Notes under the pieces: model-generated
Told to the model about the DNA's origin: nothing
Seen by the model: the letters and a program-made list of their open reading frames with translations, nothing else
Database searches by the model: none
Program-made: the position numbers and the translations under genes
NCBI RefSeq assembly: GCF_032444005.1
Contig: NC_091287.1
Span: forward strand, 536,858,001-536,922,000
From: Ranitomeya imitator
Lineage: Eukaryota
Direction of reading: 5' to 3'
Length of the DNA stretch: 64,000 nucleotides
Shown: positions 1 through 48,819 of the stretch, in pieces
Layout of the letters: every line of letters begins with the position of its first letter
Position numbering within the stretch: the first letter of the stretch is position 1

Positions 1-286
1 CATTACTGATCCTGAGTTACATCCTGTATTATACCCCAGAGCTGCACTCACTATTCTGCTGGTGCAGTCACTGTGTACATACATTACATTACTGATCCTG
101 AGTTACATCCTGTATTATATCCCAGAGCTGCACTCACTATTCTGCTGGTGAAGTCACTGTGTACATACATTACATTACTGATCCTGAGTTACATCCTGTA
201 TTATTCTCCAGAGCTGCACTCACTATTCTGCTGGTGCAGTCACTGTGTACATACATTACATTACTGATCCTGAGTTACATCCTGTA
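1..286 (+). repeat. 86-bp satellite array (runs off the left edge of the window)
   Basis: Tandem copies of cattactgatcctgagttacatcctgtattatactccagagctgcactcactattctgctggtgcagtcactgtgtacatacatta; ends abruptly at ...catcctgta (286). Confidence 0.95.
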
Positions 287-326: not shown

Positions 327-3263
327 ACCCCGGCCCCCCATGTTATAGCCAGTCAAACCTCCCAATTGCTACACCCAGAAACCCCTCTAACCTTATTAAT
401 ATTCCCTGCATGCCTTCTGTCTCTTTGAATTGTGCCCTTTGGAATTCTCGCTTTGTGTGTAATAAACTCTCCTTCATTCATGACTTCTTCCTTTCTAATT
501 CTCTTAATCTCCTGGCTCTTACTGAAACCTGGATCCAGCAGTCAGACACCACTGCTGCTGCTGCTCTTTCATATGGTGCACTACACTTTTCTCATACCCC
601 AAGATCGGACAACAGAGCAGGTGGAGGCGTTGGTCTGCTCCTTTCACCCAAATGTACTTTCCAAGTTATCCCCCAAGTACCCTCACTTGTCTTCCCTTCC
701 TTTGAGGTCCATGTGGTCAGACTCTACGTCCCCTTCTCCATGCGAGTGGTGGTGGTGTATCGTCCTCCCGGCCCCTCTCATCAGTTCCTGGATCACTTTG
801 CCACCTGGCTTCCACACTTTCTTTCCTGTGACACCCCCACCCTTATCATGGGTGATTTCAACATCCCTATTGCCTCTCCCCTCTCCCCATCTGCTTCTCA
901 CCTTTTGGCTCTAACCTCCTCTTTCGGCCTCTCGCAGCATACTAACTCGCCAACACATGAAGATGGAAACTCCCTTGACTTGGTCTTCTCCCGGCTTTGC
1001 TCAGTGGATGATTTCACAAACTCCCCTCTCCCACTCTCTGACCACCACCTTCTTTCATTCTCTATCAAGAACTGCCATCCCGCTCAGGTCACCCCCACTT
1101 TCCACACTTATAGAAACATACAGGCCATTAACACCCAGGAACTTATGAAGAACTTGCAGTCCTCATTGGCCCCAATCTCCTCCATCTCATGTCCTGATTC
1201 TGCTCTGAAGCATTACAATGAAACCCTGCAAAGTGCCCTGGATGAAGCTGCTCCTCCTATACATAAAACAACTCGGCACAGACGGCAACAACCGTGGCAC
1301 ACGCTGCAAACACGTTTCCTGCAGCGGTGCTCCAGGTGCGCAGAACGTCTGTGGAGAAAATCTAATCTACCCGAAGATTTCATCCATTATAAGTTCATGC
1401 TAAAGACATACAATTCTGCCCTTCACCTCTCCAAACAAACCTACTTCAACACCCTCATCACCTCCCTGTCCAATAACCCTAAACGTCTCTTTGACACGTT
1501 CCAGTCCCTACTCAACCCAAGAGCGCAGGCCCCAACCACGGATCTCCGTGCTGACAATCTGGCCAATTACTTCAAAGAAAAAATTGACCATATTCGACAG
1601 GAAATCATCTCCCAATCTCTTCATACCATGCACTGTCCTCCCTCCCCCACTGCATCTAGTTCACTCTCTGACTTTGAACCAGTTACAGAAGAAGAAGTAA
1701 GCAGGCTCCTTGCATCTTCTCGCCCGACCACTTGCACCAGTGACCCCATTCCGTCACATTTCCTCCAGTCCCTTTCCCCGGCTGTCACCTCTCACCTAAC
1801 AAAAATATTCAACCTTTCCCTCACTTCCGGTATTTTTCCCTCCTCATTTAAGCATGCCATCATACATCCATTACTTAAAAAACCATCCCTCGACCAAAAC
1901 TGTGCCGCTAATTATAGACCTGTCTCTAATCTTCCCTTCATCTCTAAACTCCTCGAACGCCTGGTCCACTCCCGTCTTACCCGCTATCTCTCAGATAACT
2001 CTCTTCTCGACCCTCTTCAATCTGGTTTCCGCTCTTTACACTCTACTGAAACTGCCCTCACTAAAGTCTCTAATGACCTACTAACAGCTAAATCTAATGG
2101 TCACTACTCCATGCTAATTCTCTTGGATCTCTCTGCAGCATTTGATACTGTGGATCATCAGCTCCTCCTCACTATGCTCCGCTCCATCGGCCTCAAGGAC
2201 ACCGTTCTCTCCTGGTTCTCCTCCTATCTCTCTGACCGATCCTTCACTGTATGTTTCGCTGGTTCCTCCTCCTCTCACCTTCCCCTTACTGTTGGGGTTC
2301 CTCAAGGATCAGTCCTAGGCCCCCTCCTCTTCTCTTTGTATACTGCCCCTATTGGACAAACAATCAGTAGATTTGGCTTCCAGTACCATCTCTATGCTGA
2401 CGACACCCAACTATACACTTCTTCTCCTGATCTCACGCCTGCCTTATTAGAAAACACCAGTGATTGTCTTACCGCTGTCTCTAGCATCATGTCCTCCCTC
2501 TATCTGAAACTAAACCTGTCAAAAACTGAACTCCTCGTGTTTTCTCCCTCTACTAACCTACCTTTGCCTGACATTGCCATCTCCGTTTGCGGTTCCACCA
2601 TTACTCCAAAGCAACATGCCCGCTGCCTTGGGGTCATCCTTGATTCTGACCTTTCATTCACCCCCCACATCCGATCACTGGCTCGCTCTTCTTACCTGCA
2701 TCTCAAAAACATTTCTAGAATTCGCCCTTTTCTTACTTTCGACTCTGCAAAAACTCTTACTGTTTCACTTATTCATTCTCGTCTGGACTATTGTAACTCT
2801 CTACTAATCGGCCTCCCTCTTACCAAACTCTCCCCGCTCCAATCTGTCCTGAATGCTGCTGCCAGGATCATATTCCTCACCAACCGTTACACCGATGCCT
2901 CTACCTTGTGCCAGTCATTACACTGGTTACCCATCCACTCAAGAATCCAGTACAAAACTACTACCCTCATCCACAAAGCACTCCATGGCTCAGCACCACC
3001 CTACATCTCCTCTCTGGTCTCAGTCTACCACCCTACCCGTGCCCTCCGCTCCGCTGATGACCTCAGGTTAGCATCCTCAATAATCAGAACCTCCCACTCC
3101 CGTCTCCAAGACTTTACACGTGCTGCGCCGATTCTTTGGAATGCACTACCTAGGATAATACGATTAATCCCCAATCCCCACAGTTTTAAGCGTGCCCTAA
3201 AAACTCATTTGTTCAGACTGGCCTACCGCCTCAATGCATTAACCTAACGATCCCTGTGTGGCC

Positions 3264-3294
<31 letters not shown>

Positions 3295-4039: not shown

Positions 4040-7000
4040 TTACACATCACTAAAAGAAAAGCCCCTCCAGAGGAGAGCGGCCCTCCGTGCGCCCAGTCTC
4101 CCATACTCCAGAGAGTGCACCTTCACCAGGTCACCGAGTATGGTCCTAAACACATCGTCCACTGGGAGGATTTTTCGTTGCGTCGATACTAAGCACCGTG
4201 CGTTCCACGTGTGATACCTAACCACTGTGCTAACTAGAAATAAGGTGCAGCGGTACTGACCACCAAGGTCTCCGAATGCTCCATAGGCTCATTCCGCATA
4301 GGAGAGACCAGCCAGCCGAGACCAGCAAATGAAGGCGCCCACCCTGTTGTACACCTCTGTATTGAAGGGACAATGAAGCAGGAAGTGGTCCATGCTTTCC
4401 AGCAAGGTACCACAATGCTCCCGAGGACAAATTCTGTCCTCAGAGCTCCTACACTTCAGATTGTTCCTCACACACAGTTTCCCATGGAAGCAGCGCCAAG
4501 ACAAGTCCCAAAACTTCGAGGGGATCCTGATAGAATTCAAAAGATGCAAACCCACCCCAAGATCCCGACTTGGGCAGTCACTGAGCGCCAGAGACCTCTG
4601 GAAATGGGTCAACAGAACCCTATTGTCAAGGAGTTTCCTTGGCAGAGTCCTGATCTCCCACATTCCCAGACCCCACCTACGAATTACCTTCAGAACCAAG
4701 GTAGCGTAAGCCGGAAGATGTCCATGCGGTGTGCGAAGATCCTTCACTTGCCCTCCTGTCTCCCATTCCTGGAAGAAAGGCTGAAACCATCCCCTACAGG
4801 AGAATACCCACGGAGGAGCCCTCTCTTTCCAGAGATTTGCAATATCGATCTTAATGAAGGTATCCACAAGGAATACCACAGGGTTGACCATACCCAACCC
4901 TCCTAGTCTTGTCGTACGGTAAGTAACCTCCCTCTTGACCAGGTTCAGTCTATTCCCCCATAACAGTTGGAAGAACAAACTGTAGACCCGAGTCCAGAGA
5001 GATTCTGGCAAGATGCACACACTGCCCAGATAAATCAGTAAAGGGAGCAGGTAATTTTGATCAGGTTTACCCTTTCTCTTAGGGTCAAAGACCAACCCTT
5101 CCATTGGTTCACCTTCTAAGTGGCGATCTCTAGCCTGCTGCCCCAATTTTGTTTGGGGTAATCCCCTTGGCCAAATTCGATGCCAAGGACTTTTGCAGAA
5201 ACTTTGGGTCCTGGAAGGGTGTCCGGGAGATCAAAACCAGGATCTCCTCCTCCCAGCCAGAGACTCTCACACTTATCCCGGTTGATCTTGGACCCGGATG
5301 CCTCCGAGTAGTGATCTACCTCTGACATCAGCCACCCTGCCTCCTTGTGAGAGGAAATAAACACAGTGACATTGGCATACGCCACCTGTTATGGACCTGG
5401 TGGTTAGGAGCACCCGGAACGACCTGATGGTTAAACTCACACAGGACAAGCTCTGGGAAGTAGGAACTCTGCTGACCGCAACCCCTAATCCTATCACACA
5501 ACTAGAAATAGCCGTGGGGCGTACCTAACTCGGCCTAGACGCCTCTTCACAGCCTAAGAGCTAACTAGCCCTAGAAATAGAAAATAAAGCCTACCTTGCG
5601 TCAGAGAAATTCCCCAAAGGAAAAGCAGCCCCCCACATATATTGACTGTGAGTTAAGATGAAGTCACAAACACAGAAATGAAACAGGTTTCAGCAAAGGG
5701 AGGCCAGACTTACTAAACAGACTGAGGATAGAAAAGGTATCTTTGCGGTCAGCACAAAAAAATACAAAAAGACCACGCAGAGTGTGCAAAAAGACCTCCG
5801 CATCGACTCACGGTGCGGAGGTGCCACTCTGCATCCCAGAGCTTCTAGCTAGCAAGGCAAAATCATGATAGCAAGCTGGACAAGAAAACAATGAACAAAT
5901 AATTAACTAGCTTCTGCTGGAGTAGACAGGTCACCAGAAAGATCCAAGAGCGAACTGAACCAGTACAAGAACATTGACAGCTGGCATGGAGTAACGATCT
6001 AAGTGGAGTTAAATAGAGCAGCCAGCCAAAGAATAAACTCCGTCACCTGTGGAAGAAACCTCAGAAGCAGCAGCTCCACTCACAGCCACCAGAGGGAGTC
6101 CATGGACAGAACTCGCCGAAGTACCATTCATGACCACAGGAGGAAGTTCGATAACAGAATTCACAACAGCCACCACCCTCAGAGTGGTGCTGCCTGGTCC
6201 ATCCCGATCCTGGCCAACGGTCCACGCTCCACCCTCCTAAGAAGAGGGTCAATCGCAAACACGTACAGCAGCGGGCTCAAGGGAAAACCCTGGCGAACAC
6301 CGGACCCAACCTCAAAAGAGCTGCCACTCCAACCATTTACAAGCAGGAAACTCTCTGCACCACTGTACAAGGTCTTAAGCCAATCAACAAACCCCCCTGG
6401 CAGGCCATATCTCAGAAGGATGGCACAGATGTACTCGTGATTAACCGAATCAAACGCTTTTGCCTGGTCCAGTGACAGCATGTACCCTTTCCATTGACCA
6501 GCCCTACCCTGCTCCGCTGCCTCTCGGACACAGAGCACAGCACTAAATGTGCTACGGCCTGGAACAGAGCAATGCTGGGCCTCCGAAAGGAGTCGGAGTG
6601 AAAATTTCACCAGCCAATTAAACAGCACCTTTGCCAGAACCTTCCTGTCTGCATTGAGAAGCGCTATGGGACGCCAATTCTCAATGCAAGATGGGTCCTT
6701 ACCCTTTGACAAGATGATCAGAGCAGACCTGCTCATTGACTTCAGCAGAGTGTCCGAGGAAAGACACTCATTGAATACCTCAGTCAAGAGGGGAACAAAA
6801 ACGTCCTTAAAGGTCTTATAGAATTCAGATTTTAAGCCATCTGGACCAGGCAATTTTTTTTGGGCAAGCCCTTCAATCGCCAACTGAACTTCCTCTTCCC
6901 TGATCATTTCTGTCAAAACATCAAGAGAGGGGTCTACCCCTGGTTTGGGGACAGCTTCAGCCAGGAAAGCCGACATCTCATCCCAATCAAGATCCCTCTT

Positions 7001-7995
7001 CCCCAAGAGGTGCGAGTAGAAGGATCTGACAACCTCCAGGATCCCTGATCTGGATCGCCTCAGGGACCCCGTAGTGTCGACCAGTCCTGTAACTACTTTA
7101 CTATTCACTGACATCTTGCAGTTTCTGTAAGGGTCGGGTGAGCGGTACTTCCCGTAATCCCTCTTAAAAACCAAAGATGCATGTCTATTGTACGGACACC
7201 TCATAAGCAAAGGACTGTCTTATCTCCGCTTCTTCCAAGAGAGACGAATTGAGCCTCCAAAAGCCTCTTCCCATCCGGAGGGTCTCTAACATTCCGAGAA
7301 AACAAAATTAAACAGTGGTCGGAGAATTCCACCTCAACAACAGACACTGCTGAAGAGACAGCTTCCTCCTTTAAATAAAACCTATCTATCCTAGACCTAC
7401 AATTACCTCTATGATAGGTGAACCCCTCGTGGCCTGGGGTGTGCCGAATGTGGACATGCACCAGGCGAGCCTCACTAGCTATACTATTAAGGGCGACGCT
7501 ATCATAAGTCAGCTTGTCTCTGGAACCTCCTCTATCTCGGTGCCTCGTGACAGCATTGAAATCCCCTCTAAAGACAACATGCCAACTTGTAAAAAGGTAG
7601 GGCTTGATCCTCATAAAGAGACACTTGCGGTCCCACTTAGATTGGGGACCATAGATGTTGATGAGCGGGAGCTCTTGTCCCTTCATGAGGACATCTAAGA
7701 TCAGGCACCTCCCCATTTCTAACTCAATAACCCGTCGGTATTCCACCGGTGCGGTAAAAAGGACCGCCATTCCACTATACGGCTCGGCTGAAAGAGTCCA
7801 ATAGGAGGGCCTGAGTCTCCACTCCCTCTTAGCTTTAAACACATCTGCCATGTTTGGCAGCCTGGTCTCTTGCAAAAAGAAAATGTCAGCTTCAACCTGG
7901 CTGAGAAAATCAAAGGCCGCAAACCTAGCTGTATTTGACTTTATGCTGGTGACATTAATGGATGCCAGCGTCAACGGAGTGGGATCCGCCATCAT
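4040..7995 (-). pseudogene. Tx1-clade ORF2 (endonuclease-RT), frameshifted and split by a solo LTR
   Basis: Fragments: 7201-7995 (SINV, LQET, GDFN, IDRFY, SDH), 6179-7210 (PGPDG, WRPIALLN, LDQAKAFD, GVRQG.PLSP), 5116-5385, 4289-5146 (C..CG.LLESMDHFLLHC) and 4040-4225. The catalytic YADD motif reads YAN-. Confidence 0.92.
5387..6168 (-). mobile_element. Solo LTR (782 bp), probably Gypsy-like
   Basis: TGTT...AACA termini; gccacc duplicated at 5381-5386 and 6169-6174. Removing the insert restores the RT frame LRVVAY. Strand is tentative, from a TATA-like ctatttaa on the minus strand. Confidence 0.85.
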
Positions 7996-9630
7996 TGGTG
8001 ATCGAGTTAGATGACTTTCTTTTTCCCACTCCCCTTATCCTCTGCCTCAGAGGAGGAATCCTTCCCCCTCTTTAATGATAATGAGGTATCCATTCCCACG
8101 TGTTTTTTATTTTTATCGTCCTCGTCTCCGGACTCTGGGCCAGTCCCTCCGTCCAAGGATCTTACATTCCCAGAAGAAGGAGACTCGGCGTCCTCTGTGA
8201 GCCTGGCTGAAGCCAGAACCTCACCCTCAGCTTCCTCCTCAGAGGAAGAGATGTTTTCAAGGGCCTGGAACCGGTTAGAATGCCCAACCAGAGGGGAGTC
8301 GGTTTTTCCTTCCTTAGATACGTTGGTCAGAGCAGGAGAAGATTTTTTATCTCCCTTCTTTCTCTTCTTTTTGGTGCTGAGCTTACGCTTGTCCTCTAGC
8401 CACTGCCTATTATCCTCATCCATACTTTCATAATGGGAGGACTCTGAGGCAGTGGCACTTTCCTCCCTGTGGATCCTCCTGACCTCCTCATCCAACTCAT
8501 CATCCCTCGGTGCCTCAGCAGCAAGACTGGCATCCAGAACAGGGCCGCCCCAGTAGCCCGAGGCTCGCCCAGCTCCCTATCCTCTCTGCGCTTGTCTAGA
8601 CGCCTTAGCTGGGCAGGCGTCTTTTTATTGCTTTTCTTCCTTGGCCCCTCCGCTCCCTCACCCCTGCTAGTCCCTTCCCCAGCAGAATCAGCGTCACGGC
8701 TTTCTCCCAGTGGGGTCATGACTGCATTAGCGAAGGAGCGAGGACAACAGCTGAATGGGTGACCTAACTCACCCCACAGGTGGCACCTAATCTCCACACA
8801 AAATGCAGCAAGATGGCCAATATCCCCACACAATGCACATTTCTGCACAGTGCAGTTTGTGCTGAAGTGTGTGGGGTCACCGCACTTGTGACAGAGCTTC
8901 GGTTGCCCCTGGTAGAAGACCAAGATACGATCCCTACCCAGGAAGACAGATGATGGTATGTGGGCAACCGTACCACCTGAACGCTTAAGTTTTACCACAA
9001 ACGTCCAGGCCCCTGACCAGATACCAAACTCGTCACGGTTTTTCTTTGGCATTTCTACCACCTCTCCATACCAGCCAAGCCACGTCATGATGTCATAACA
9101 AGAAAGCGACTCGTTACAAGTCATCACGGTCACTTTCTTGACTTGGTTTTGGCGAGACACCACCTAAATGGAAAAGTCTCGCCAGCCAGGCTCATTTTTT
9201 GCCAACTCATAGTTCAACCAGAAGAGCTCAAGCCCCTCTGGACGAACAAAGCTGACATCAAACTCAGGTGTGGACTAGGGATGTATGAAGGCATAGATGT
9301 CAATCGCCCTGAAGCCCATCCTCAGCAGGAGCTCCACAACTTTAGACCTTGGAGGACACGCATCACTGCCCCTCCACCGAAGATGGACCACATTCCTACG
9401 CACACTACCCGGCCCGGCTGTTGGCAGGGACCACACTGTATCCCCCCCTCTTTGCTCTCGGAAGGCCCCAAGGCCATGCCTCTCTATCCAGAAGGATAGA
9501 TCAACCTCTCGACCCTCTACCATTAGTGATCTCTCTCCCTTCTTTAGAGCCTCCAGGAGACGCCGTTGCAACATGCCATCCCCAGAGCCCAGAGACGAGG
9601 AGGATGCCCTATTTCCCCCGGAGGTGACAG

Positions 9631-9704
9631 TAGCAAAACTCCTGACAGGTGCTTATACCACTGGGGGGGGGGGGCAACCGGACCAGTGACTACATCCACA
9701 CCAA
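9631..9704 (+). repeat. Left copy of the 74-bp target-site duplication flanking the ribozyme array
   Basis: tagcaaaactcctgacagg...catccacaccaa recurs at 11306-11384; the only visible difference is G-run length (12 vs 17). Confidence 0.95.
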
Positions 9705-9937
9705 AGGCCTGGCTATTCACTGCTTGCGTCGAGAAACACGTGATGGTGTCTCCGCAGCTTCTTTTCTTGCATCTGCATATTTCCCATAAGGGATGGGGGC
9801 AGTGTTCTGGAATCACTGCGTTGAGAAACACGTGATGGTGTCTCCGCGGTGTTGGATGTTTTGGTCTCCCCGAGGCCAATCATCTGTGCCTTTATAGCCT
9901 TTTTACTAGGCACTGCTCCTAATAGCCAGATTCCTAC

Positions 9938-9981
9938 TCCACACTGATGAGGGGCAAAACCCCGAAACAGCTGTCTGTGGA
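9938..9981 (+). ncRNA. Type I hammerhead ribozyme, copy 1
   Basis: Stem I UCCACA(9938-43)/UGUGGA(9976-81); core CUGAUGA(9944-50); stem II GGGG-CAAAA-CCCC(9951-63); GAAA(9964-67); palindromic stem III ACAGCUGU(9967-74); GUC triplet with predicted cleavage 3' of 9975. Confidence 0.92.
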
Positions 9982-10289
9982 TGGATACCATGCTTGGCAT
10001 AGGTGGCTTTCCTTCATAGGATGCTGCCCTTCCCGTGGTTGTTCCTTCCCGGGGAAAGGCCTGGCTATTCACTGCTTGCGTCGAGAAACACGTGATGGTG
10101 TCTCCGCAGCTTCTTTTCTTGCATCTGCATATTTCCCATAAGGGATGGGGGCAGGGTTCTGGAATCACTGCGTTGAGAAACACGTGATGGTGTCTCCGCG
10201 GTGTTGGATGTTTTGGTCTCCCCGAGGCCAATCATCTGTGCCTTTATAGCCTTTTTACTAGGCACTGCTCCTAATAGCCAGATTCCTAC

Positions 10290-10333
10290 TCCACACTGAT
10301 GAGGGGCAAAACCCCGAAACAGCTGTCTGTGGA
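10290..10333 (+). ncRNA. Type I hammerhead ribozyme, copy 2
   Basis: Identical to copy 1, shifted +352; predicted cleavage 3' of 10327. Confidence 0.92.
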
Positions 10334-10641
10334 TGGATACCATGCTTGGCATAGGTGGCTTTCCTTCATAGGATGCTGCCCTTCCCGTGGTTGTTCCTTC
10401 CCGGGGAAAGGCCTGGCTATTCACTGCTTGCGTCGAGAAACACGTGATGGTGTCTCCGCAGCTTCTTTTCTTGCATCTGCATATTTCCCATAAGGGATGG
10501 GGGCAGTGTTCTGGAATCACTGCGTTGAGAAACACGTGATGGTGTCTCCGCGGTGTTGGATGTTTTGGTCTCCCCGAGGCCAATCATCTGTGCCTTTATA
10601 GCCTTTTTACTAGGCACTGCTCCTAATAGCCAGATTCCTAC

Positions 10642-10685
10642 TCCACACTGATGAGGGGCAAAACCCCGAAACAGCTGTCTGTGGA
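10642..10685 (+). ncRNA. Type I hammerhead ribozyme, copy 3
   Basis: Identical to copy 1, shifted +704; predicted cleavage 3' of 10679. Confidence 0.92.
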
Positions 10686-10993
10686 TGGATACCATGCTTG
10701 GCATAGGTGGCTTTCCTTCATAGGATGCTGCCCTTCCCGTGGTTGTTCCTTCCCGGGGAAAGGCCTGGCTATTCACTGCTTGCGTCGAGAAACACGTGAT
10801 GGTGTCTCCGCAGCTTCTTTTCTTGCATCTGCATATTTCCCATAAGGGATGGGGGCAGTGTTCTGGAATCACTGCGTTGAGAAACACGTGATGGTGTCTC
10901 CGCGGTGTTGGATGTTTTGGTCTCCCCGAGGCCAATCATCTGTGCCTTTATAGCCTTTTTACTAGGCACTGCTCCTAATAGCCAGATTCCTAC

Positions 10994-11037
10994 TCCACAC
11001 TGATGAGGGGCAAAACCCCGAAACAGCTGTCTGTGGA
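10994..11037 (+). ncRNA. Type I hammerhead ribozyme, copy 4
   Basis: Identical to copy 1, shifted +1056; predicted cleavage 3' of 11031. Confidence 0.92.
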
Positions 11038-11305
11038 TGGATACCATGCTTGGCATAGGTGGCTTTCCTTCATAGGATGCTGCCCTTCCCGTGGTTGTTC
11101 CTTCCCGGGGAAAGGCCTGGCTATCCACTGCTTGCGTCGAGAAACACGTGATGGTGTCTCCGCAGCTTCTTTTCTTGCATCTGCATATTTCCCATAAGGG
11201 ATGGGGGCAGTGTTCTGGAATCACTGCGTTGAGAAACACGTGATGGTGTCTCCGCGGTGTTGGATGTTTTGGTCTCCCCGAGGCCAATCATCTGTGCCTT
11301 TATAG

Positions 11306-11384
11306 TAGCAAAACTCCTGACAGGTGCTTATACCACTGGGGGGGGGGGGGGGGGCAACCGGACCAGTGACTACATCCACACCAA
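11306..11384 (+). repeat. Right copy of the target-site duplication
   Basis: Duplicate of 9631-9704; Tx1 ORF1 sequence resumes at 11385. Confidence 0.95.
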
Positions 11385-13190
11385 CAGCATCACTATTACC
11401 CACCTTCATAACCCCCTCACCCTCTACCAAACCAGCAACCACACCACTAGACAAAGAATTTTCCTCATCCATACCCACCATCACATTCACTCCTGCTGGA
11501 CCAGTGACAACAGGGGGTGATATTATGACCTCTGCATCATCAGGCACAAGGGGCTGAGTCTCCTCCACAGAACTGGAGGTGACCTCACCCCTGGTCTTAC
11601 GTGTGCCCTCCGCATCATCAGATATTTTCCGCTGCTTTACTGTTGATACCAGGTGCCGCTGATATTTTGCTGCTGTGGGACGCCGCTGATTCTTTATATC
11701 AGCATCTTGTTGACCAGCGGCACCAACACAGAACAGGACTTTGGTGGGAGGACCGGAACTCCCAGCCCCAGCAACCCCCTCACACTGCCGCCGCTTCTCA
11801 ACTAAGTGATCAGCGGCAACAGCATTCAGGGGCACCGAGGCTAACGGAGCTGCCCCCGACACCGGGTCGCTCCCCTCTCCCACTGAGGAGCGCACCACAG
11901 TATCGTGGCCTGACCTTTTGCCCGCCACCGGGTTGCCCTCACTGTCCAGCATTTCGGCTGATGCACCTGTTGCTACGTCCCTGCTACTACAAGCAGAGAC
12001 GGAGCTCTGCGCCTCATTACATTGCTTTGTAATCTCCCCGCGCCTTTGCACTGGATCCACAGCAGAACCCGGGCCAGGCTGGGTAACGGGGCTTATACAG
12101 CGAACTGATCCTGCAGCCGACTCAGGGGGTACAGGGAAGGGGGCATGTACATAGCTTACCGCTTCCTGCAGCTTAGGTTTGATCTTCTTTACATTTTTCT
12201 TCTGGCCCCCAGGTGCCTCCTCTGGTAAATCATCACCAAGATGGAAGTTCTGAAGGCACACAGGGGACTCCAGCAGCTTGATCTCTGCCATTAGCGCCCC
12301 TCCCTGGCCGCTGTTGTCACTGTCCTCCCCAGAGCCAGCAGAACTGCGCTTGTCCCGCAGGAAGCTTGCTGCACGTGGCCTGTGAGTGACTAAGCAGGCT
12401 GCCAGATGGGGCTTTCTGCTGGTCATCATCCTGCTCATCATCATCCACCTGGCACTCAGGCTGCAGCCCCATCTGCCTTTGCTCTCTGTTATCAGCCATT
12501 TCTCTGAATCGATCTTCATTAATACGTTTTTCCTTAAACGATCCACTTTTTTCTCTGATGAAAGCTTTTCTGACTTCAAGCTCATTGATGTCAAATTTCA
12601 GTCTCCTTACCTCCGCCTGGAGCTGATTCTTCCTCGGTTTGGAGGAATCTGCAGCTTTGTTGCTTGTGCAGCGCAACTCCTCCCGGAGCCTCCTCAGGGT
12701 CTTACTAGCTTGTTCATACTCACGGAGATGGCTCATGACACGGGAGGCATAGGTGGTCACAGACTCCCGGGGTCTCTGCAGCGCCCAACCCTCCTCAGTG
12801 AGGTCGGCCTCACCTCCGTGAGCACTCAGCTTTCCTCCGGAAGGACCGCCGTCTTGCACGCTAGCAGGCTTCTCCTCCATGGAAGCCTTGCGGCTGCTCT
12901 GGGTCTCTGCAGACCTGGGGGGAGTAGGAGCCACATTGCTGCGACTCCTGGTGGAGCGTCTCACCCCCGAATCCTCTGAAGTGCAGGCTGGTTCCTTCTG
13001 CCCCCCGCCAGCCAGGTCTGGGAAGCAGAAGCCTGGGACTTGGCTCCTTCACTCATCCCAGGAAACCCACTCCCTCCCTGTTTAAGAGAGAGAGCAGGTC
13101 CCCGGGTGGAGAGATGGTTCCCAGGAGCTCAGGAGCACACTGCAGGTTCAGCAGCGACCGCACCCACAATCAACACAATGAGCAGTAGCT

Positions 13191-13994
13191 GAGCTGCACT
13201 CACTACTCTGAAGGTGCAGTCACTGTGTATATACATTACATTACTGATCCAGTACTGATCCTGAGTTACATCCTGTATTATACTCCAGAGCTGCACTCAC
13301 TACTCTGAAGGTGCAGTCACTGTGTACATACATTACTGATCCAGTACTGATCCTGAGTTACATCCTGTATTATACTCCAGAGCTGCACTCACTATTCTGC
13401 TGGTGCAGACACTGTGTACCTACATTACATTACTTATCCTGAGTTACATCCTGTATTATAATCCAGAGCTGCACTCACTATTCTGCTGGTGCAGTCACTG
13501 TGTACATACATTACATTACTTATCCTGAGTTACATCCTGTATTATACTCCAGAGCTGCACTCACTATTCTGCTGGTAGAGTCACTGTGTACATACATTAC
13601 ATTACTTATCCTGAGTTACATCCTGTATTATCCTCCAGCGCTGCACTCACTATTCTGCTGGTGCAGTCACTGTGTACATACATTACATTACTGATCCTGA
13701 GTTATATCCTGTATTATTCTCCAGAGCTGCACTCACTATTCTGCTGGTGCAGACACTGTGTACATACATTACATTACTGATCCTGAGTTATATCCTGTAT
13801 TATTCTCCAGAGCTGCACTCACTATTCTGCTGGTGCAGTCACTGTGTACATACATTACATTACTGATCCTGAGTTACATCCTGTATTATACTCCAGAGCT
13901 GCACTCACTATTCTGCTGGTAGAGTCATTGTGTACCTACCTTACATTACTTATCCTGAGTTACATCCTGTATTATACTCCAGAGCTGCACTCAC
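13191..13994 (+). repeat. 86-bp satellite array, continuation of 1-286 after the Tx1 insertion
   Basis: About 9 monomers, same orientation as 1-286. Confidence 0.95.
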
Positions 13995-14900: not shown

Positions 14901-15563
14901 TAATGGATGGATGTGCTAAATATGGCCCCATTCAGTCGTCCATTTTTCGTGTACGATAATATCCTTACCTGTGATAGTCTATGGGGCCATACACAAGTAT
15001 GTGATTTTTTGTAAACCAAGTGGTCCGCATAAAGTTTAGGAGTCTTGTCTGATTTGGATCAAAAATGGTAAGGTAATTCTACGGGTCTGGGAAAAATATC
15101 TTTAAACTTTTTATTAAAGAGACACTTTTGTACTAAAAAATAAAAAAATTGTCAAAAAATTATCCACTAATTTAATGTTTTTTTAAATGGAATTTAGAAG
15201 GTAAGTGCTGGCAAAGTAGATACTGGGTATAGCATAATGGATGGATTTGCTGAATATGGCCGCATTGTCGTCCATTTTTCGTGTACGATAATATCCTTAC
15301 CTGTGATAGTCTATGGGGCCATACACAAGTATGTGATTTTTTTGCAAACCAAGTGGTCCGCTTAAAGTTTAGGAGTCTTGCCTGATTTGGACCAAAAATG
15401 GTAAGGTAATTCTAGGTCTGGGAAAAAATATCTTTAAACTTTTTATTAAAGAGACACTTTCGTACTAAAAAATAAAAAAATGTCTAAAAATTATCCACTG
15501 ATTTAATGTTTTTTTAAAATGGAATTTAGAAGGTAAGTGCTGTCAAAGTAGATACTGGGTATA
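14901..15563. repeat. Two-copy tandem duplication, about 334-bp period
   Basis: taatggatgg...gatactgggtata at 14901 and again at 15235, with scattered substitutions. Confidence 0.85.
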
Positions 15564-16785: not shown

Positions 16786-18408
16786 CAGTTAGGGCCAGAA
16801 ATATTTGGACAGTCACACAATTTTCGCGAGTTGGGCTCTGCATGCCACCACATTGGATTTGAAATGAAACCTCTACAACAGAATTCAAGTGCAGATTGTA
16901 ACGTTTAATTTGAAGGGTTGAACAAAAATATCTGATAGAAAATGTAGGAATTGTACACATTTCTTTACAAACACTCCACGTTTTAGGAGGTCAAAAGTAA
17001 TTGGACAAATTAACATAACCCAAACAAAATATTTTTATTTTCAATATTTTGTTGCAAATCCTTTGGAGGCAATCACTGCCTTAAGTCTGGAACCCATGGA
17101 CATCACCAAACGCTGGGTTTCCTCCTTCTTAATGCTTTGCCAGGCCTTTACAGCCGCAGCCTTCAGGTCTTGCTTGTTTGTGGGTCTTTCCGTCTTAAGT
17201 CTGGATTTGAGCAAGTGAAATGCATGCTCAATTGGGTTTAGATCTGGAGATTGACTTGGCCATTGCAGAATGTTCCACTTTTTGGCACTCATGGGGTCAT
17301 TGTCCATCTGTACTATGAAGCGCCGTCCAATCAACTTTGCAGCATTTGGCTGAATCTGGGCTGAAAGTATATCCCGGTACACTTCAGAATTCATCCGGCT
17401 ACTCTTGTCTGCTCTTATGTCATCAATAAACACAAGTGACCCAGTGCCATTGAATGCCATGCATGCCCATGCCATCACGTTGCCTCCACCATGTTTTACA
17501 GAGGATGTGGTGTGCCTTGGATCATGTGCCGTTCCCTTTCTTCTCCAAACTTTTTTCTTCCCATCATTCTGGTACAGGTTGATCTTTGTCTCATCTGTCC
17601 ATAGAATACTTTTCCAGAACTGAGCTGGCTTCTTGAGGTGTTTTTCTGCAAATTTAACTCTGGCCTGTCTATTTTTGGTATTGATGAATGGTTTGCATCT
17701 AGATGTGAACCCTTTGTATTTACTGTCATGGAGTCTTCTCTTTACTGTTGACTTAGAGACAGATACACCTACTTCACTGAGAGTGTTCTGGACTTCAGTT
17801 GATGTTGTGAACGGGTTCTTCTTCACCAAATTAAGTATGCGGCGATCATCCACCACTGTTGTCATCCGTGGACGCCCAGGCCTTTTTGAGTTCCCAAGCT
17901 CACCAGTCAATTCCTTTTTTCTCAGAATGTACCCAACTGTTGATTTTGCTACTCCAAGCATGTCTGCTATCTCTCTGATGGATTTTTTCTTTTTTTTCAG
18001 CCTCAGGATGTTCTGCTTCACCTCAATTGAGAGTTCCTTTGACCGCATGTTGTCTGCTCACAGCAACAGCTTCCAAATGCAAAACCACACACCTGGAATC
18101 CACCCCTGACCTTTTAACTACTTCATTGATTACAGGTTAACGAGGGAGACGCCTTCAGAGTTAATTGCAGCCCTTAGAGTCCATTGTCCAATTACTTTTG
18201 GTCCCTTGAAAAAGAGGACGCTATGCATTACAGAGCTATGATTCCTAAACCCTTTCTCCGATTTGGATGTGGAAACTATCATATTGCAGCTGGGAGTGTG
18301 CACTTTCAGCCCATATTAAATATATAATTTTATTTCTGAACATGTTTTTGTAAACAGCTAAAATAACAAAACTTGTGTCACTGTCCAAATATTTCTGGCC
18401 CTAACTGT
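16786..18408 (-). mobile_element. Tc1/mariner DNA transposon (1623 bp)
   Basis: TIRs CAGTTAGGGCCAGAAATATTTGGACAGT; TA TSD at 16784-85 and 18409-10; internal inverted sites caaaagtaattggaca / tgtccaattacttttg. Confidence 0.95.
17041..18048 (-). CDS. Tc1 transposase, open frame of 335 aa with an apparent 10-aa deletion in the catalytic domain (probably inactive)
   Basis: HTH region, GRPR, WTDETK, KHGGG.VM.W, MDNDP and WPSQSPDLNPIE; 24 residues between the second D and the E instead of 34. Confidence 0.85.
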   Translation of the reverse strand: MRSKELSIEVKQNILRLKKKKKSIREIADMLGVAKSTVGYILRKKELTGELGNSKRPGRPRMTTVVDDRRILNLVKKNPFTTSTEVQNTLSEVGVSVSKSTVKRRLHDSKYKGFTSRCKPFINTKNRQARVKFAEKHLKKPAQFWKSILWTDETKINLYQNDGKKKVWRRKGTAHDPRHTTSSVKHGGGNVMAWACMAFNGTGSLVFIDDIRADKSSRMNSEVYRDILSAQIQPNAAKLIGRRFIVQMDNDPMSAKKWNILQWPSQSPDLNPIEHAFHLLKSRLKTERPTNKQDLKAAAVKAWQSIKKEETQRLVMSMGSRLKAVIASKGFATKY

Positions 18409-37218: not shown

Positions 37219-40200
37219 TGTATTAAACTCCAGAGCTGTACTCACTATTCTGCTGGTGCAGTCACTGTGTACATACATTACATTACTGATCCTGAGTTAC
37301 ATCCTGTATTACATCCCAGAGCTGCACTCACTATTCTGCTGGTGCAGTCACTGTGTACATACATTACATTACTGATCCTGAGTTACATCCTGTATTACAC
37401 CCCAGAGCTGCACTCACTATTCTGCTGGTGCAGTCACTGTGTACATACATTACATTACTGATCCTGAGTTACATCCTGTATTACACTCCAGAGCTGCACT
37501 CACTATTCTGCTGGTGCAATCACTGTGTACATACATTACATTACTGATCCTGAGTTACATCCTGTATTATACCCCAGAGCTGCACTCACTATTCTGCTGG
37601 TGCAATCACTGTGTACATACATTACATTACTGATCCTGAGTTACATCCTGTATTATACCCCAGAGCTGCACTCACTATTCTGCTGGTGGAGTCACTGTGT
37701 ACATACATTACATTACTGATTCTGAGTTACATCCTGTATTATACCCCAGAGCTGCACTCACTATTCTGCTGGTGCAGTCACTGTGTACATACATAACATT
37801 ACTGATCCTGTACTGATCCTGAGTTACATCCTGTACTATATTCCAGAGCTGCACTCACTATTCTGCTGGTGCAGTCACTGTGTACATACATTACATTACT
37901 GATCCTGTACTGATCCTGAGTTACATCCTGTATTATACTCCAGAGCTGCACTCACTATTCTGCTGGTGCAGTCACTGTGTACATACATTACATTACTGAT
38001 CCTAAGTTACATCCTGTATTATACCCCAGAGCTGCACTCACTATTCTGCTGGTGCAGTCACTGTGTGCATACATTACATTACTGATCCTGAGTTACATCC
38101 TGTATTATACTCCAGAGCTGCACTCACTATTCTGCTGGTGCAGTCACTGTGTACATACATTACATTACTGATCCTGAGTTACATCATGTATTATGCTCCA
38201 GAGCTGCACTCACTATTCTGCTGGTGCAGTCACTGTGTACATACATTACATTACTGATCCTGAGTTACATCCTGTATTATACTCCAGAGCTGCACTCACT
38301 ATTCTGCTGGTGCAGTCACTGTGTACATACATTACATTACTGATCCTGAGTTACATCCTGTATTATACCCCAGAGCTGCACTCACTATTCTGCTGGTGGT
38401 CACTGTGTACATACATTACATTACTGATTCTGAGTTACATCCTGTATTATACCCCAGAGCTGCACTCACTATTCTGCTGGTGCAGTCACTGTGTACATAC
38501 ATAACATTACTGATCCTGTACTGATCCTGAGTTACATCCTGTACTATATTCCAGAGCTGCACTCACTATTCTGCTGGTGCAGTCACTGTGTACATGCATT
38601 ACATTACTGATCCTGTACTGATCCTGAGTTACATCCTGTATTATACTCCAGAGCTGCACTCACTATTCTGCTGGTGCAGTCACTGTGTACATACATTACA
38701 TTACTGATCCTGAGTTACATCCTGTATTATACTCCAGAGCTGCACTCACTATTCTGCTGGTGCAGTCACTGTGTACATACATTACATTACTGATCCTGAG
38801 TTACATCCTGTATTATACTCCAGAGCTGCACTCACTATTCTGCTGGTGCAGTCACTGTGTACATACATTACATTACTGATCCTGCACTGATCCTGAGTTA
38901 CATCCTGTACTATATTCCAGAGCTGCACTCACTATTCTGCTGGTGCAGTCACTGTGTACATACATTACATTACTGATCCTGTACTGATCCTGAGTTACAT
39001 CCTGTATTATACTCCAGAGCTGCACTCACTATTCTGCTGGTGCAGTCACTGTGTACATACATTACATTACTGATCCTAAGTTACATCCTGTATTATACCC
39101 CAGAGCTGCACTCACTATTCTGCTGGTGCAGTCACTGTGTGCATACATTACATTACTGATCCTGAGTTACATCCTGTATTATACTCCAGAGCTGCACTCA
39201 CTATTCTGCTGGTGCAGTCACTGTGTACATACATTACATTACTGATCCTGAGTTACATCCTGTATTATACTCCAGAGCTGCACTCACTATTCTGCTGGTG
39301 CAGTCACTGTGTACATACATTACATTACTGATCCTGAGTTACATCATGTATTATGCTCCAGAGCTGCACTCACTATTCTGCTGGTGCAGTCACTGTGTAC
39401 ATACATTACATTACTGATCCTGTACTGATCCTGAGTTACATCCTGTATTATACTCCAGAGCTGCACTCACTATTCTGCTGGTGCAGTCACTGTGTACATA
39501 CATTACATTACTGATCCTAAGTTACATCCTGTATTATACCCCAGAGCTGCACTCACTATTCTGCTGGTGCAGTCACTGTGTGCATACATTACATTACTGA
39601 TCCTGAGTTACATCCTGTATTATACTCCAGAGCTGCACTCACTATTCTGCTGGTGCAGTCACTGTGTACATACATTACATTACTGATCCTGAGTTACATC
39701 CTGTATTATACTCCAGAGCTGCACTCACTATTCTGCTGGTGCAGTCACTGTGTACATACATTACATTACTGATCCTGAGTTACATCATGTATTATGCTCC
39801 AGAGCTGCACTCACTATTCTGCTGGTGCAGTCACTGTGTACATACATTACATTACTGATCCTGAGTTACATCCTGTATTATACTCCAGAGCTGCACTCAC
39901 TATTCTGCTGGTGCAGTCACTGTGTACATACATTACATTACTGATCCTGAGTTACATCCTGTATTATACCCCAGAGCTGCACTCACTATTCTGCTGGTGG
40001 TCACTGTGTACATACATTACATTACTGATTCTGAGTTACATCCTGTATTATACCCCAGAGCTGCACTCACTATTCTGCTGGTGCAGTCACTGTGTACATA
40101 CATAACATTACTGATCCTGTACTGATCCTGAGTTACATCCTGTACTATATTCCAGAGCTGCGCTCACTATTCTGCTGGTGCAGTCACTGTGTACATGCAT

Positions 40201-48065: not shown

Positions 48066-48819
48066 AGTATAGTATACATTGGCCTAAGAACAGAGAGGAG
48101 CTCTGAGGAGATTGCCTGAAGACAGAGAGGAGCACTGAAAAGATGACCTGAGAGTAGAGAAAATCACAGAGAAGATGGCCTGCGGCAAGAGAGAGCACTG
48201 AGGAGGCAGCCTGAGGACAGAGAATAGCCTCCAGGAGATGGTCTGAGAACAGAGAGGATTACTGAAAAGATGGCCTGAAAGAAGAGAGGAGCAATGAGGA
48301 TAAAACCTGAGCGTGGATTGATAGGACCATGAATTTAGGAGTCAAATGTGATGAACACCTGGACAAAAAGTTGACACAGCCCATTAAAGTCACTGGGGAC
48401 AGTCGGGATCTGCTGTGCATTCAATGACAAATTCGTCTTCAGCTGCTTTGCATTGTTCTGCTCCTATAATGGACTGGAGAATAACAAGGTTTAGTAGTAG
48501 TGTGAACAAATGCTTCAAAGGTTGGTTCATCACTTTCTAAACTTTTCTTAATGAGGCCAAGTGAAAATGAAATGGTGGCTGTGGTTATGGGCTGCACTCT
48601 GCGTGAAACATATTCTGTCCCTTTTCTCATCCTAAAAAAGTTGCTACATATACAAGCATAAAAGTAAAAAGAAAAAAACACCCCCAAAGGGGTCCATAAT
48701 TTTCCTTTACCGTCCTCTATACTGTCAAAATAAATCGTCAGACCCTATGGCTAAGGCAATGTTGAAATGTCACGCATCTTGAAAATTGTGATGTGTCATT
48801 TTTAGAATGCGATAACATG

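What the first reader, a model, noticed from the sequence alone, without database searches (positions are those of the whole stretch)
9705..11305. Hammerhead-ribozyme retroelement (retrozyme): tandem 352-bp units each encoding a self-cleaving RNA
Seen: four identical, complete type I hammerheads spaced exactly 352 nt apart (UCCACA-CUGAUGA-GGGG CAAAA CCCC-GAAA-CAGCUG-UC^-UGUGGA). All conserved core nucleotides are present, with a GUC cleavage triplet. The unit has no credible ORF but several hairpins (CCCAU/AUGGG 9783-97, GCAGUG/CACUGC 9799-9819, UCCU-UCAU-AGGA). Established: tandem type I hammerhead repeats of a few hundred bp (newt satellite 2, Schistosoma Sm-alpha, cricket pDo500, metazoan non-LTR retrozymes) yield multimeric transcripts that self-cleave to monomers and circularise. 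Inference: this is a frog family of viroid-like 352-nt circRNA retroelements, recently mobile and hidden inside another TE. I cannot tell from sequence alone whether this family has been described.
Basis: partly seen in the sequence, partly recalled or inferred. Interest (0 to 1): 0.92.

Follow-up and report, generated by a model that had tools for sequence, protein, structure and literature searches.

The report
Hammerhead retrozyme array in poison-frog LINE
A 1.6-kb block of 4.55 near-identical 352-bp repeats, each carrying a complete hammerhead self-cleaving RNA motif, was inserted recently into an old LINE element of a poison frog; it is a clean new example of a class of mobile element (the non-LTR retrozyme) already described in amphibians.

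Summary
The array spans 9703-11305: 4.55 units of 352 bp with only two substitutions. It carries four identical 44-nt type I hammerheads, with cleavage predicted 3' of C9975, C10327, C10679 and C11031. The motif has the canonical metazoan architecture: helix I of 6 bp, helix II of 4 bp, helix III of 2 bp plus the palindromic AGCU loop. ACAGCUGU can form the 8-bp helix III of a double hammerhead.

Rfam Hammerhead_1 scores only 20 bits (threshold 34), but equally good motifs arise in only 0.007 of shuffled windows.

New here: the array is bracketed by a 72-76 bp direct duplication of host sequence (9629-9704 and 11304-11384) with 2-nt microhomologies and no poly(A). It lies antisense in the 5' part of a decayed LINE. 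Flanking protein matches place the window in a dendrobatoid frog.

The best reading is one recent retrotransposition of a non-LTR retrozyme, probably by rolling-circle reverse transcription of a 352-nt circular RNA.

The class is known from axolotl, newts and Xenopus, and a 2026 survey found it in all seven amphibians sampled. This is therefore a new member of a known kind. Self-cleavage, circles and other genomic copies could not be tested with these tools.

The parts
9703..11305 (+). Retrozyme array: 4.55 head-to-tail units of 352 bp. The first two bases (AA, 9703-9704) and the last two (AG, 11304-11305) could equally belong to the host, as junction microhomology.
   Evidence: TRF; unit alignment; blastn of the unit against the window (no copy outside the array); junction sequences.
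9938..9981 (+). Type I hammerhead, copy 1. Helix I UCCACA/UGUGGA; core CUGAUGA; helix II GGGG/CCCC with loop CAAAA; GAAA; helix III AC/GU with loop AGCU. Cleavage is predicted 3' of C9975.
10290..10333 (+). Type I hammerhead, copy 2, identical to copy 1. Cleavage predicted 3' of C10327.
10642..10685 (+). Type I hammerhead, copy 3, identical to copy 1. Cleavage predicted 3' of C10679.
10994..11037 (+). Type I hammerhead, copy 4, identical to copy 1. Cleavage predicted 3' of C11031. The fifth, partial unit (11111-11305) ends before its hammerhead.
9976..10327 (+). First of three predicted excisable 352-nt monomers; the others are 10328-10679 and 10680-11031. Folded as a circle: -123.8 kcal/mol, 64% of bases paired, branched.
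   Evidence: Circular-fold z-scores against dinucleotide shuffles are -2.5 (plus) and -3.6 (minus); the linear fold gives -2.9 and -3.1.
9725..9755 (+). 31-nt module TGCGTCGAGAAACACGTGATGGTGTCTCCGC, first copy in the unit. Its twin at 9817-9847 is 30/31 identical, and both recur every 352 nt. Each folds as the hairpin GAGA-AA-CAC/GUG-UCUC. Function unknown.
   Evidence: score 57 against a null maximum of 21; hairpins in the MFE.
9629..9704 (.). Left copy of the target-site duplication: 72 unambiguous nt (9631-9702) plus 2 ambiguous nt at each end. Contains a G12 run at 9663-9674.
   Evidence: the repeat finder families D4 and D5; blastn; junction print-out.
11304..11384 (.). Right copy of the target-site duplication. 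It is identical to the left copy except that the G run is G17 (11338-11354).
4289..9574 (-). Host LINE, decayed, with several frameshifts. ORF1-like part with ZCCHC3-type RNA-binding domains and a CCHC knuckle (8396-9574); AP endonuclease (7201-7995); reverse transcriptase (6179-7210); zf-RVT (4289-5146). The array lies about 55 nt upstream (on the minus strand) of the ORF1 Met at 9574. The repeat-derived sequence continues upstream of the array to about 12964.
   Evidence: ORF list; Pfam; three-frame translation of the site with the array removed; dendrobatid protein matches to the upstream part.

Best explanation
This is a non-LTR retrozyme: a non-coding, non-autonomous retroelement whose 352-nt unit carries one canonical metazoan type I hammerhead.

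Shown by the sequence:
- 4.55 almost identical units.
- Array ends that do not coincide with the ribozyme cleavage site. The array starts at monomer position about 80 and ends at about 274.
- No poly(A).
- 2-nt microhomologies at both junctions (AA on the left, AG on the right).
- A 72-76 bp duplication of the host sequence on both sides.

Inferred integration. A single recent target-primed reverse-transcription event occurred at two nicks about 75 bp apart. The reverse transcriptase ran about 4.5 times round a 352-nt circular RNA, or along a multimeric transcript, and laid down a concatemeric cDNA. The enzyme was most likely supplied by a Penelope-like element. The site is in the 5' part of an older LINE, in antisense orientation.

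Inferred life cycle, from the axolotl and newt work:
1. A plus-strand multimeric transcript forms.
2. Neighbouring hammerheads pair through the ACAGCUGU palindrome into a double hammerhead, because the single motif has only a 2-bp helix III.
3. [quoted passage not shown]
4. The RtcB-type tRNA ligase closes them into circles.
5. The circles are the transposition template.

Whether this particular copy is transcribed is unknown.
For: Array and unit identity.

Complete hammerhead core in all four full units. Full-length alignment to Rfam Hammerhead_1.

The architecture matches the published description of canonical metazoan type I hammerheads: helix I 6 bp, helix II 4 bp, helix III 1-2 bp capped by a 2-4 nt palindromic loop (PMC4209133).

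Dimer mode:
- The 2-bp helix III hairpin is unstable on its own (+1.7 kcal/mol).
- The ACAGCUGU duplex is worth -11.1 kcal/mol.
- Co-folding two motifs returns the double hammerhead at -36.3 kcal/mol, against 2 x -15.4.

Target-site duplication and microhomologies. The duplicated copies are identical apart from a homopolymer length, and only 2 substitutions are seen in 1603 bp, so the insertion is young.

Non-coding. Structured RNA. No other Rfam ribozyme in either polarity of a full unit.

Literature:
- Axolotl Rtz_353 (353 nt; helix III of 2 bp plus tetraloop) is expressed as linear and circular RNA, cleaves better as a dimer and is circularised by RtcB. TSDs of metazoan retrozymes are 'larger than 4 bp' (PMC7229834).
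- Retrozymes were found in all 7 amphibians surveyed and are related to PLE pseudo-LTRs.
- PLE target duplications vary in length because the two nicks are variably spaced (PMC8557442).
- A PLE reverse transcriptase initiates internally on its template (PMC11167929).
Against: - The Rfam score (20 bits) is below the curated threshold of 34, and the motif is missed in whole-window scans.
- Only this one locus could be examined, so 'family' and 'dispersed copies' are untested.
- There is no expression or cleavage evidence. In Xenopus only 1 of 9 predicted retrozyme dimers cleaved in vitro.
- In a 501-nt two-hammerhead transcript the double-hammerhead fold lies 2.6 kcal/mol above the MFE, with about 2% pair probability.
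- Unit GC is 52%, whereas published metazoan retrozymes are described as below 50%.
- No Penelope-like element was seen among the window's longer ORFs.
- 72-76 bp is long for a target duplication.
- Array growth by unequal crossing-over after a shorter insertion cannot be excluded.
Confidence: 0.8

Rival explanations
1. A shorter retrozyme insertion (about 1.5 units) was followed by local amplification at the DNA level. The element arrived as a short cDNA and grew to 4.55 units by unequal crossing-over or replication slippage, as ordinary satellites do. No rolling-circle reverse transcription is needed.
For: Unequal exchange inside an array keeps its two outer junctions and the target duplication intact, so searches are equally compatible. 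The 2026 survey explicitly proposes local amplification of retrozymes into tandem arrays.
Against: The units are almost identical (2 differences in 1603 bp) and the flanking duplication is equally pristine. Several successive exchanges would therefore have had to occur in a very short time. A concatemeric cDNA explains the same facts in one step.
Confidence: 0.12
2. The array is a 5'-truncated Penelope-like element reduced to tandem pseudo-LTRs, not an independent non-autonomous family.
For: PLEs insert as partial tandems, are often 5'-truncated, carry type I hammerheads in their pseudo-LTRs and give target duplications of variable length. Xenopus retrozyme families group with PLE pseudo-LTRs.
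Against: There is no PLE coding sequence in or next to the array, and none among the window's longer ORFs. PLE hammerheads are described as minimal variants lacking the helix III loop or the loop-loop contacts, whereas this motif is the canonical form. Four and a half identical full units without any ORF remnant are not the usual truncated-PLE layout.
Confidence: 0.05
3. Integration was at the DNA level. A piece of hammerhead satellite, or an extrachromosomal circle derived from one and copied by rolling-circle DNA synthesis, was captured during repair of a staggered double-strand break.
For: There is no poly(A), and both junctions show 2-nt microhomology, as in end-joining.
Against: End-joining capture does not normally produce a precise 72-76 bp duplication of the target. 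Staggered nicking with fill-in, as in target-primed reverse transcription, does. The element belongs to a class for which RNA circles are documented.
Confidence: 0.02
4. The array is an ordinary satellite in which a hammerhead-like string occurs by chance and has no catalytic meaning.
For: The Rfam score is below the gathering threshold. The four copies are a single sequence repeated.
Against: A motif of this quality arises 0.007 times per shuffled window. It would also have to fall in one of the few tandem repeats whose period lies in the 150-450 bp range published for retrozymes, and match the canonical metazoan architecture in every helix length, including the palindromic loop 3.
Confidence: 0.01

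Closest known systems
Axolotl non-LTR retrozyme Rtz_353 with HHR_Amex2 (Cervera and de la Pena 2020, PMC7229834)
   Same: An amphibian tandem repeat of almost the same unit length (353 against 352 nt). It has one type I hammerhead per unit, with helix III of 2 bp capped by a palindromic tetraloop (ACGU there, AGCU here). There is no ORF, and the predicted monomer RNA is branched and highly paired. Dimer-dependent cleavage and RtcB circularisation were shown there.
   Different: I saw no sequence similarity outside the ribozyme core when reading the construct sequence in the supplement; this was not formally aligned. Helix II here is a clean GGGG/CCCC, whereas Amex2 has a U-U mismatch at its base. 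The cleavage triplet is GUC here and GUA there. The host is an anuran, not a caudate. Nothing has been tested experimentally here.
Newt satellite 2 and axolotl Rtz_331 with HHR_Amex1
   Same: Tandem units of about 330 bp, a type I hammerhead, an A-rich loop 2 (CAAAAA against CAAAA here), and activity as a double hammerhead.
   Different: Their helix III has a single base pair; here there are two. The core there reads CUGAGGA, here CUGAUGA.
Xenopus non-LTR retrozyme families (Li, Clavereau and Pollet 2026, bioRxiv 10.64898/2026.07.22.740005)
   Same: Anuran tandem repeats with a type I hammerhead in each unit. Mean amphibian consensus length is 316 bp, and most families reach at most seven units. 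[quoted passage not shown] Here there are four units and -15.4 kcal/mol.
   Different: Their consensus sequences are not held in the library, so homology could not be checked. The species list is in their Supplementary Table 1, which I could not read, so I cannot say whether a dendrobatid was sampled. A search of the full text of the held papers found no match to this hammerhead string.
Penelope-like element pseudo-LTR hammerheads
   Same: Type I topology, tandem arrangement and dimeric mode. PLEs are the presumed source of the reverse transcriptase and nuclease, and they give target duplications of variable length.
   Different: PLE motifs are minimal, with no helix III loop, and sit next to an RT/GIY-YIG ORF. 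Here the motif is canonical and no ORF is present.
Plant LTR retrozymes
   Same: Non-autonomous retroelements that make hammerhead-processed circular RNAs.
   Different: They have type III hammerheads in two LTRs, a PBS and a PPT, 4-bp target duplications and circles of 600-1000 nt. None of these features is present here.

Membership tests
Hammerhead ribozyme, type I (Rfam RF00163) | Score at or above Rfam's curated gathering threshold (34 bits) | tested here: not met
   20 bits, E = 0.0067 on a 91-nt slice, with full-length alignment to model positions 1-45. Not reported in the window-wide or 1.8-kb scans.
Hammerhead ribozyme, type I (Rfam RF00163) | Conserved core C3-U4-G5-A6-N7-G8-A9, G12-A13-A14, the A15.1-U16.1 pair, and H17 at the cleavage site | tested here: met
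   CUGAUGA ... GAAA ... A-U pair ... GUC is present in all four copies.
Hammerhead ribozyme, type I (Rfam RF00163) | Three helices around the core, with helix I open-ended (type I topology) | tested here: met
   Helix I is 6 bp and open. Helix II is 4 bp closed by CAAAA. Helix III is 2 bp closed by AGCU.
Hammerhead ribozyme, type I (Rfam RF00163) | Site-specific self-cleavage in the presence of Mg2+ | not testable with these tools
   Needs in vitro transcription of monomeric and dimeric constructs.
Canonical metazoan type I hammerhead (as defined in PMC4209133) | Helix I 6 bp, helix II 4 bp, helix III 1-2 bp capped by a 2-4 nt palindromic loop, allowing a dimeric active form | tested here: met
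   6 / 4 / 2 bp with the AGCU loop. ACAGCUGU is self-complementary. Co-folding gives the double hammerhead.
Metazoan non-LTR retrozyme | Head-to-tail repeats of roughly 150-450 bp with one type I hammerhead in each unit | tested here: met
   352-bp period and 4.55 units, with a motif in each of the four full units.
Metazoan non-LTR retrozyme | Non-coding, and lacking LTR, PBS and PPT | tested here: met
   The only long ORF (172 aa, antisense, TTG start, running across a unit boundary) has no Pfam match and no homologue in two protein libraries. There are no terminal repeats other than the unit itself.
Metazoan non-LTR retrozyme | Target-site duplication longer than the 4 bp of plant retrozymes, when one is present | tested here: met
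   A 72-76 bp duplication exactly bracketing the array.
Metazoan non-LTR retrozyme | Monomer RNA predicted to be compact and highly self-paired | tested here: met
   Circular MFE -123.8 kcal/mol, 64% paired, z = -2.5 (1 of 200 shuffles as good). Linear fold z = -2.9. This is a modest excess over shuffles, not strong evidence.
Metazoan non-LTR retrozyme | Expressed as linear and circular monomeric RNA | not testable with these tools
   No transcriptome of the source species can be searched at the nucleotide level here.
Metazoan non-LTR retrozyme | Multiple dispersed genomic copies (a family) | not testable with these tools
   There is no second locus in the 64-kb window. Dendrobatid genome DNA could not be fetched.
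Metazoan non-LTR retrozyme | Co-occurrence with Penelope-like elements in the same genome | tested here: inconclusive
   No PLE among the window's ORFs of 150 aa or more, nor among those of 80 aa or more between 5000 and 17000. An anuran-wide repeat annotation that includes four dendrobatid genomes analyses Penelope as a TE family (PMC12822217), but I did not see Penelope content reported for dendrobatids specifically.
Metazoan non-LTR retrozyme | Low GC content (below 50%), given as a usual property rather than a definition | tested here: not met
   Unit GC is 52% against a window average of 44%.
Penelope-like element | ORF with a telomerase-like RT and a GIY-YIG endonuclease between pseudo-LTRs | tested here: not met
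   There is no such ORF in or beside the array. The flanks are LINE sequence with an AP endonuclease and RVT_1.

The most novel reading that the evidence does not exclude
This locus may be an unusually clean snapshot of retrozyme integration. It shows a concatemer of 4.55 identical units, ends away from the cleavage site, 2-nt microhomologies and a 72-76 bp target duplication. That pattern would be direct genomic evidence that a circular RNA was copied by rolling-circle, internally initiated target-primed reverse transcription at widely staggered nicks, as a PLE-type enzyme would do. On this reading the twin 31-nt hairpin modules (30/31 identical within the unit) are the element the reverse transcriptase recognises. 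If other insertions of the family share the same 3' phase (...GCCUUUAUAG), the initiation site would be defined from sequence alone.
Probability: 0.15. Interest if true: 0.55.

Novelty: new member of a known kind. Interest (0 to 1): 0.3.

Why it matters
Non-LTR retrozymes are thought to move through small circular RNAs copied by a borrowed reverse transcriptase, but the integration step has been inferred rather than observed, and target duplications are reported only in passing. A young insertion still shows both junctions, an intact long target duplication and a fractional number of identical units. That gives concrete, checkable parameters: nick spacing, junction microhomology, and the phase of initiation and termination. 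These can be compared across all copies in the poison-frog genomes and set against the in vitro behaviour of Penelope-like enzymes. It also extends the class to dendrobatoid frogs, whose very large genomes are rich in retroelements. Beyond that it is an expected kind of element in an amphibian genome.

Tried and rejected
**Rfam**
- The scan at gathering thresholds and the 1.8-kb E-value scan were both empty. The hammerhead surfaced only on a 91-nt slice.
- A whole-unit scan showed no other ribozyme family in either polarity.

**Other copies through proteins**
- The 172-aa antisense ORF was searched in the 5.8-billion word-indexed library and in the 1.84-billion HMMER library. There were no hits, so no spurious gene calls on related arrays exist there.

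**Other copies through DNA patterns**
- The 25-nt hammerhead core in viral contigs gave nothing.
- In metagenomes it gave one lake contig with an unrelated 599-bp repeat.
- The 25-nt hairpin-module string gave nothing in prokaryotic genome contigs or viral contigs.

**A paralogous or orthologous 'empty site'**
- Dendrobatid proteins matching the LINE part upstream of the insertion were found, but their genomic DNA could not be fetched: the files are too large or the protein is not on record.

**Published sequences**
- A full-text search for the hammerhead string gave nothing.
- The supplement of the 2026 survey held here is only an oligonucleotide order form, without consensus sequences.

**Internal structure of the unit**
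- I tested for an ancient sub-repeat of about 96 nt. Only the 31-nt module is significant.

**Host ORF continuity**
- I tested whether removing the array restores one long LINE ORF. It does not. The upstream 457-aa ORF and the ORF1 frame are not continuous with either G-run length. The insertion is therefore best described as lying in the LINE's 5' part just upstream of ORF1, not as splitting an intact ORF.

**A second hammerhead candidate**
- The relaxed-descriptor match at 48666-48741 (-) has no Rfam hammerhead support and was set aside as probable chance.
Full report
**1. What is there**

Tandem Repeats Finder reports a single array at 9703-11305 with a 352-bp period, 4.6 copies, 99% matches and no indels. 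Aligning the five units shows only two substitutions in 1603 bp.

The 44-nt string UCCACA-CUGAUGA-GGGG-CAAAA-CCCC-GAAA-C-AGCU-G-UC-UGUGGA occurs exactly four times on the plus strand, at 9938, 10290, 10642 and 10994. No such match is expected in shuffled sequence. The fifth, partial unit stops before its motif.

**2. Is it a hammerhead?**

All core positions are present: C3-U4-G5-A6-U7-G8-A9, G12-A13-A14, the A15.1-U16.1 pair and C17.
- Helix I is 6 bp and open-ended, which makes this type I.
- Helix II is 4 bp closed by CAAAA.
- Helix III is only 2 bp (AC/GU), closed by the palindromic tetraloop AGCU.

This is exactly the published description of the canonical metazoan type I hammerhead: helix I 6 bp, helix II 4 bp, helix III 1-2 bp with a 2-4 nt palindromic loop (PMC4209133).

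Rfam is less generous. Nothing reaches a gathering score in the window, and a 1.8-kb E-value scan is empty. Only a 91-nt slice returns RF00163 Hammerhead_1, aligned over the whole model, at 20 bits against a threshold of 34. I report that as a membership feature not met.

To judge chance independently I wrote a descriptor scan requiring the core plus the three helices. It recovers the four copies. A motif at least as good appears 0.007 times per dinucleotide-shuffled window. That it also sits once per unit in a tandem repeat of retrozyme-like period makes coincidence very unlikely. The four copies are still one sequence repeated.

**3. Dimer mode**

On its own the 2-bp helix III hairpin is unfavourable (+1.7 kcal/mol). 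ACAGCUGU is self-complementary and forms an 8-bp duplex worth -11.1 kcal/mol. Co-folding two 44-nt motifs returns the classical double hammerhead at -36.3 kcal/mol, against 2 x -15.4 for the separate minimum-energy folds.

In a 501-nt transcript spanning two neighbouring motifs, the double-hammerhead fold lies 2.6 kcal/mol above the minimum, with about 2% pair probability. It is accessible but not predicted to dominate. Nearest-neighbour models ignore the tertiary contacts that drive this ribozyme.

This matches newt and axolotl hammerheads, which cleave poorly as single motifs and well as dimers (PMC7229834).

**4. The rest of the unit**

- The 352-nt monomer between cleavage sites folds into a branched structure. 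As a circle it gives -123.8 kcal/mol with 64% of bases paired. The z-score is -2.5 for the plus polarity and -3.6 for the minus polarity. Linear folds give -2.9 and -3.1. This is a moderate excess over shuffles.
- The only long ORF is antisense, starts with TTG and runs across a unit boundary. It has no Pfam match and no relative in either protein library.
- No other Rfam ribozyme appears in either polarity.
- The unit contains two copies, 30/31 identical and 92 nt apart, of a 31-nt module that folds as a hairpin. No wider sub-repeat exists. Its role is unexplained.
- GC is 52% and CpG observed/expected is 0.50, close to the window's 0.46.

**5.

The array is bracketed by a direct duplication of host sequence, 9629-9704 on the left and 11304-11384 on the right. 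The two copies are identical except for a G run of 12 against 17. Seventy-two nucleotides are unambiguous. Two more at each end (AG and AA) are shared between host and unit, giving 2-nt microhomologies at both junctions.

There is no poly(A). The array starts and ends away from the ribozyme cleavage site, at monomer positions about 80 and about 274.

The surrounding sequence is a LINE on the minus strand, comprising:
- ZCCHC3-type RNA-binding domains and a CCHC knuckle;
- an AP endonuclease;
- a reverse transcriptase;
- a zf-RVT domain.

It carries several frameshifts. The insertion lies about 55 nt upstream of the ORF1 methionine, in antisense orientation. Removing the array does not restore one long ORF.

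Proteins matching the repeat-derived sequence upstream of the array come only from dendrobatoid frogs:
- Phyllobates terribilis, up to 91% identity;
- Dendrobates tinctorius;
- Anomaloglossus baeobatrachus.

The window therefore comes from a poison frog or a close relative.

**6. Mechanism**

*Shown:* a concatemer of identical units, a long precise target duplication, junction microhomology, no tail.

*Inferred:* one recent target-primed reverse-transcription event at two nicks about 75 bp apart. The template was either a 352-nt circular RNA copied about 4.5 times round or a multimeric transcript. With 2 substitutions in 1603 bp and none in the duplicated flanks, the event is of the order of a million years old or less. 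That figure assumes a typical vertebrate neutral rate (my own assumption) and carries wide error.

The enzyme source is inferred to be a Penelope-like element, for three reasons:
- Their nicks are variably spaced, which gives duplications of variable length (PMC8557442).
- A purified PLE protein initiates reverse transcription internally on its template (PMC11167929).
- Retrozymes co-occur with PLEs and group with their pseudo-LTRs (bioRxiv 10.64898/2026.07.22.740005).

The RNA half of the cycle is taken from the axolotl work and is not tested here. It comprises a multimeric transcript, double-hammerhead cleavage, RtcB ligation and a circle.

A caution applies: only 1 of 9 predicted Xenopus retrozyme dimers cleaved in vitro. 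An intact motif is not proof of activity.

**7. Rivals**

- *Local DNA-level amplification after a shorter insertion.* It fits the same junctions but needs several exchanges in a very short time.
- *A truncated PLE reduced to pseudo-LTRs.* This is unlikely because no ORF remnant is present and the motif is canonical rather than minimal.
- *Capture of satellite DNA during break repair.* It does not explain a precise 72-76 bp duplication.
- *A chance motif.* It is excluded at roughly the 10^-2 level per window before its position in the repeat is considered.

**8. Comparison and novelty**

The closest described elements are:
- axolotl Rtz_353 with HHR_Amex2, which has the same unit length to within one nucleotide and the same helix III design;
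- newt satellite 2 and axolotl Rtz_331;
- the Xenopus retrozyme families.

By the operational rule of the 2026 survey this array would be called an active non-LTR retrozyme. I found no published occurrence of this particular sequence and could not compare it with the survey's consensus sequences.

It is a new member of a known kind. The interesting detail is the unusually clean integration signature, which makes the integration step checkable across the genome. The existence of the element itself is not surprising.

**9. Limits**

These tools give no nucleotide access to frog genomes or transcriptomes. Copy number, conservation, covariation, the empty site, the autonomous partner and expression all remain open. 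They are listed as next steps.

Noticed in passing
L001:1-1133 (metagenome contig TBL_comb48_EPIDRAFT_1068898): A lake-metagenome contig carries a 599-bp direct repeat. Each copy has a minimal type I hammerhead on the minus strand (ACUUCA-CUGAUGA-GGGG-CAAAA-CCCC-GAAA-CCGG-UA, then UGGAGU). Helix II and loop 2 are identical over 25 nt to the frog motif. Helix III is a loop-less palindrome (ACCGGU), as in Penelope-like elements. The rest of the unit is AT-rich and unrelated. It is probably a retrozyme or PLE repeat of an unidentified aquatic eukaryote. Rfam gives only HH9 at 15.9 bits.
   Followed up: partly
window 9725-9755 and 9817-9847 (recurring every 352 nt): Two 31-nt modules, 30/31 identical, lie inside each unit. 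Each forms a hairpin. They contain GAAACACGUG, the same string as GAAA plus helix III of the axolotl HHR_Amex2 construct. No upstream CUGAUGA is present, so it is not a second hammerhead. It could be a protein-binding or priming element, or a ribozyme relic.
   Followed up: partly
window 9663-9674 and 11338-11354: The two copies of the target duplication differ only in a G homopolymer (12 against 17). This is either post-insertion slippage or an assembly length error. Published PLE-type elements show insertion bias towards simple repeats including (C)n, which may or may not be relevant.
   Followed up: no
window 48666-48741 (-): A relaxed hammerhead-descriptor match (helix I 5 bp, II 3 bp, III 2 bp, long loops, U-A at the base of helix II). 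The chance rate for the relaxed descriptor is 0.01 per window, but an Rfam slice scan gives no hammerhead hit. It is probably chance.
   Followed up: yes
window 12144-12345 (-), and proteins P0003, P0004, P0007, P0009: A segment of about 65 aa from the repeat upstream of the array matches at 71-91% identity inside annotated dendrobatid gene models. These are named TNF ligand superfamily member 13 isoform X2, adenylate kinase 8 isoform X2, reticulon-2 isoform X3 and a glycine transporter. This suggests exonised or mis-annotated transposon sequence in those models.
   Followed up: no
window 410-3294 (+): An uninterrupted 945-aa ORF with AP endonuclease and reverse transcriptase domains is followed by an A25 run. 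It looks like a young, possibly intact LINE ORF2 with its poly(A) tail.
   Followed up: partly
window 17041-18048 (-): A 335-aa ORF with Tc1/mariner-type HTH and DDE_3 transposase domains.
   Followed up: partly
window 1-286, 13253-13994, 37219-41636, 59559-60834: One 86-bp satellite occurs in at least four arrays in the window, in both orientations. The largest has about 50 copies. A 35-bp satellite (46830-48061) and a 24-bp satellite (63014-63491) are also present.
   Followed up: no
window 14901-15563: A second tandem repeat with a period of a few hundred bp (332 bp, 2 copies, 94% identity). It has no hammerhead by the descriptor scan.
   Followed up: partly
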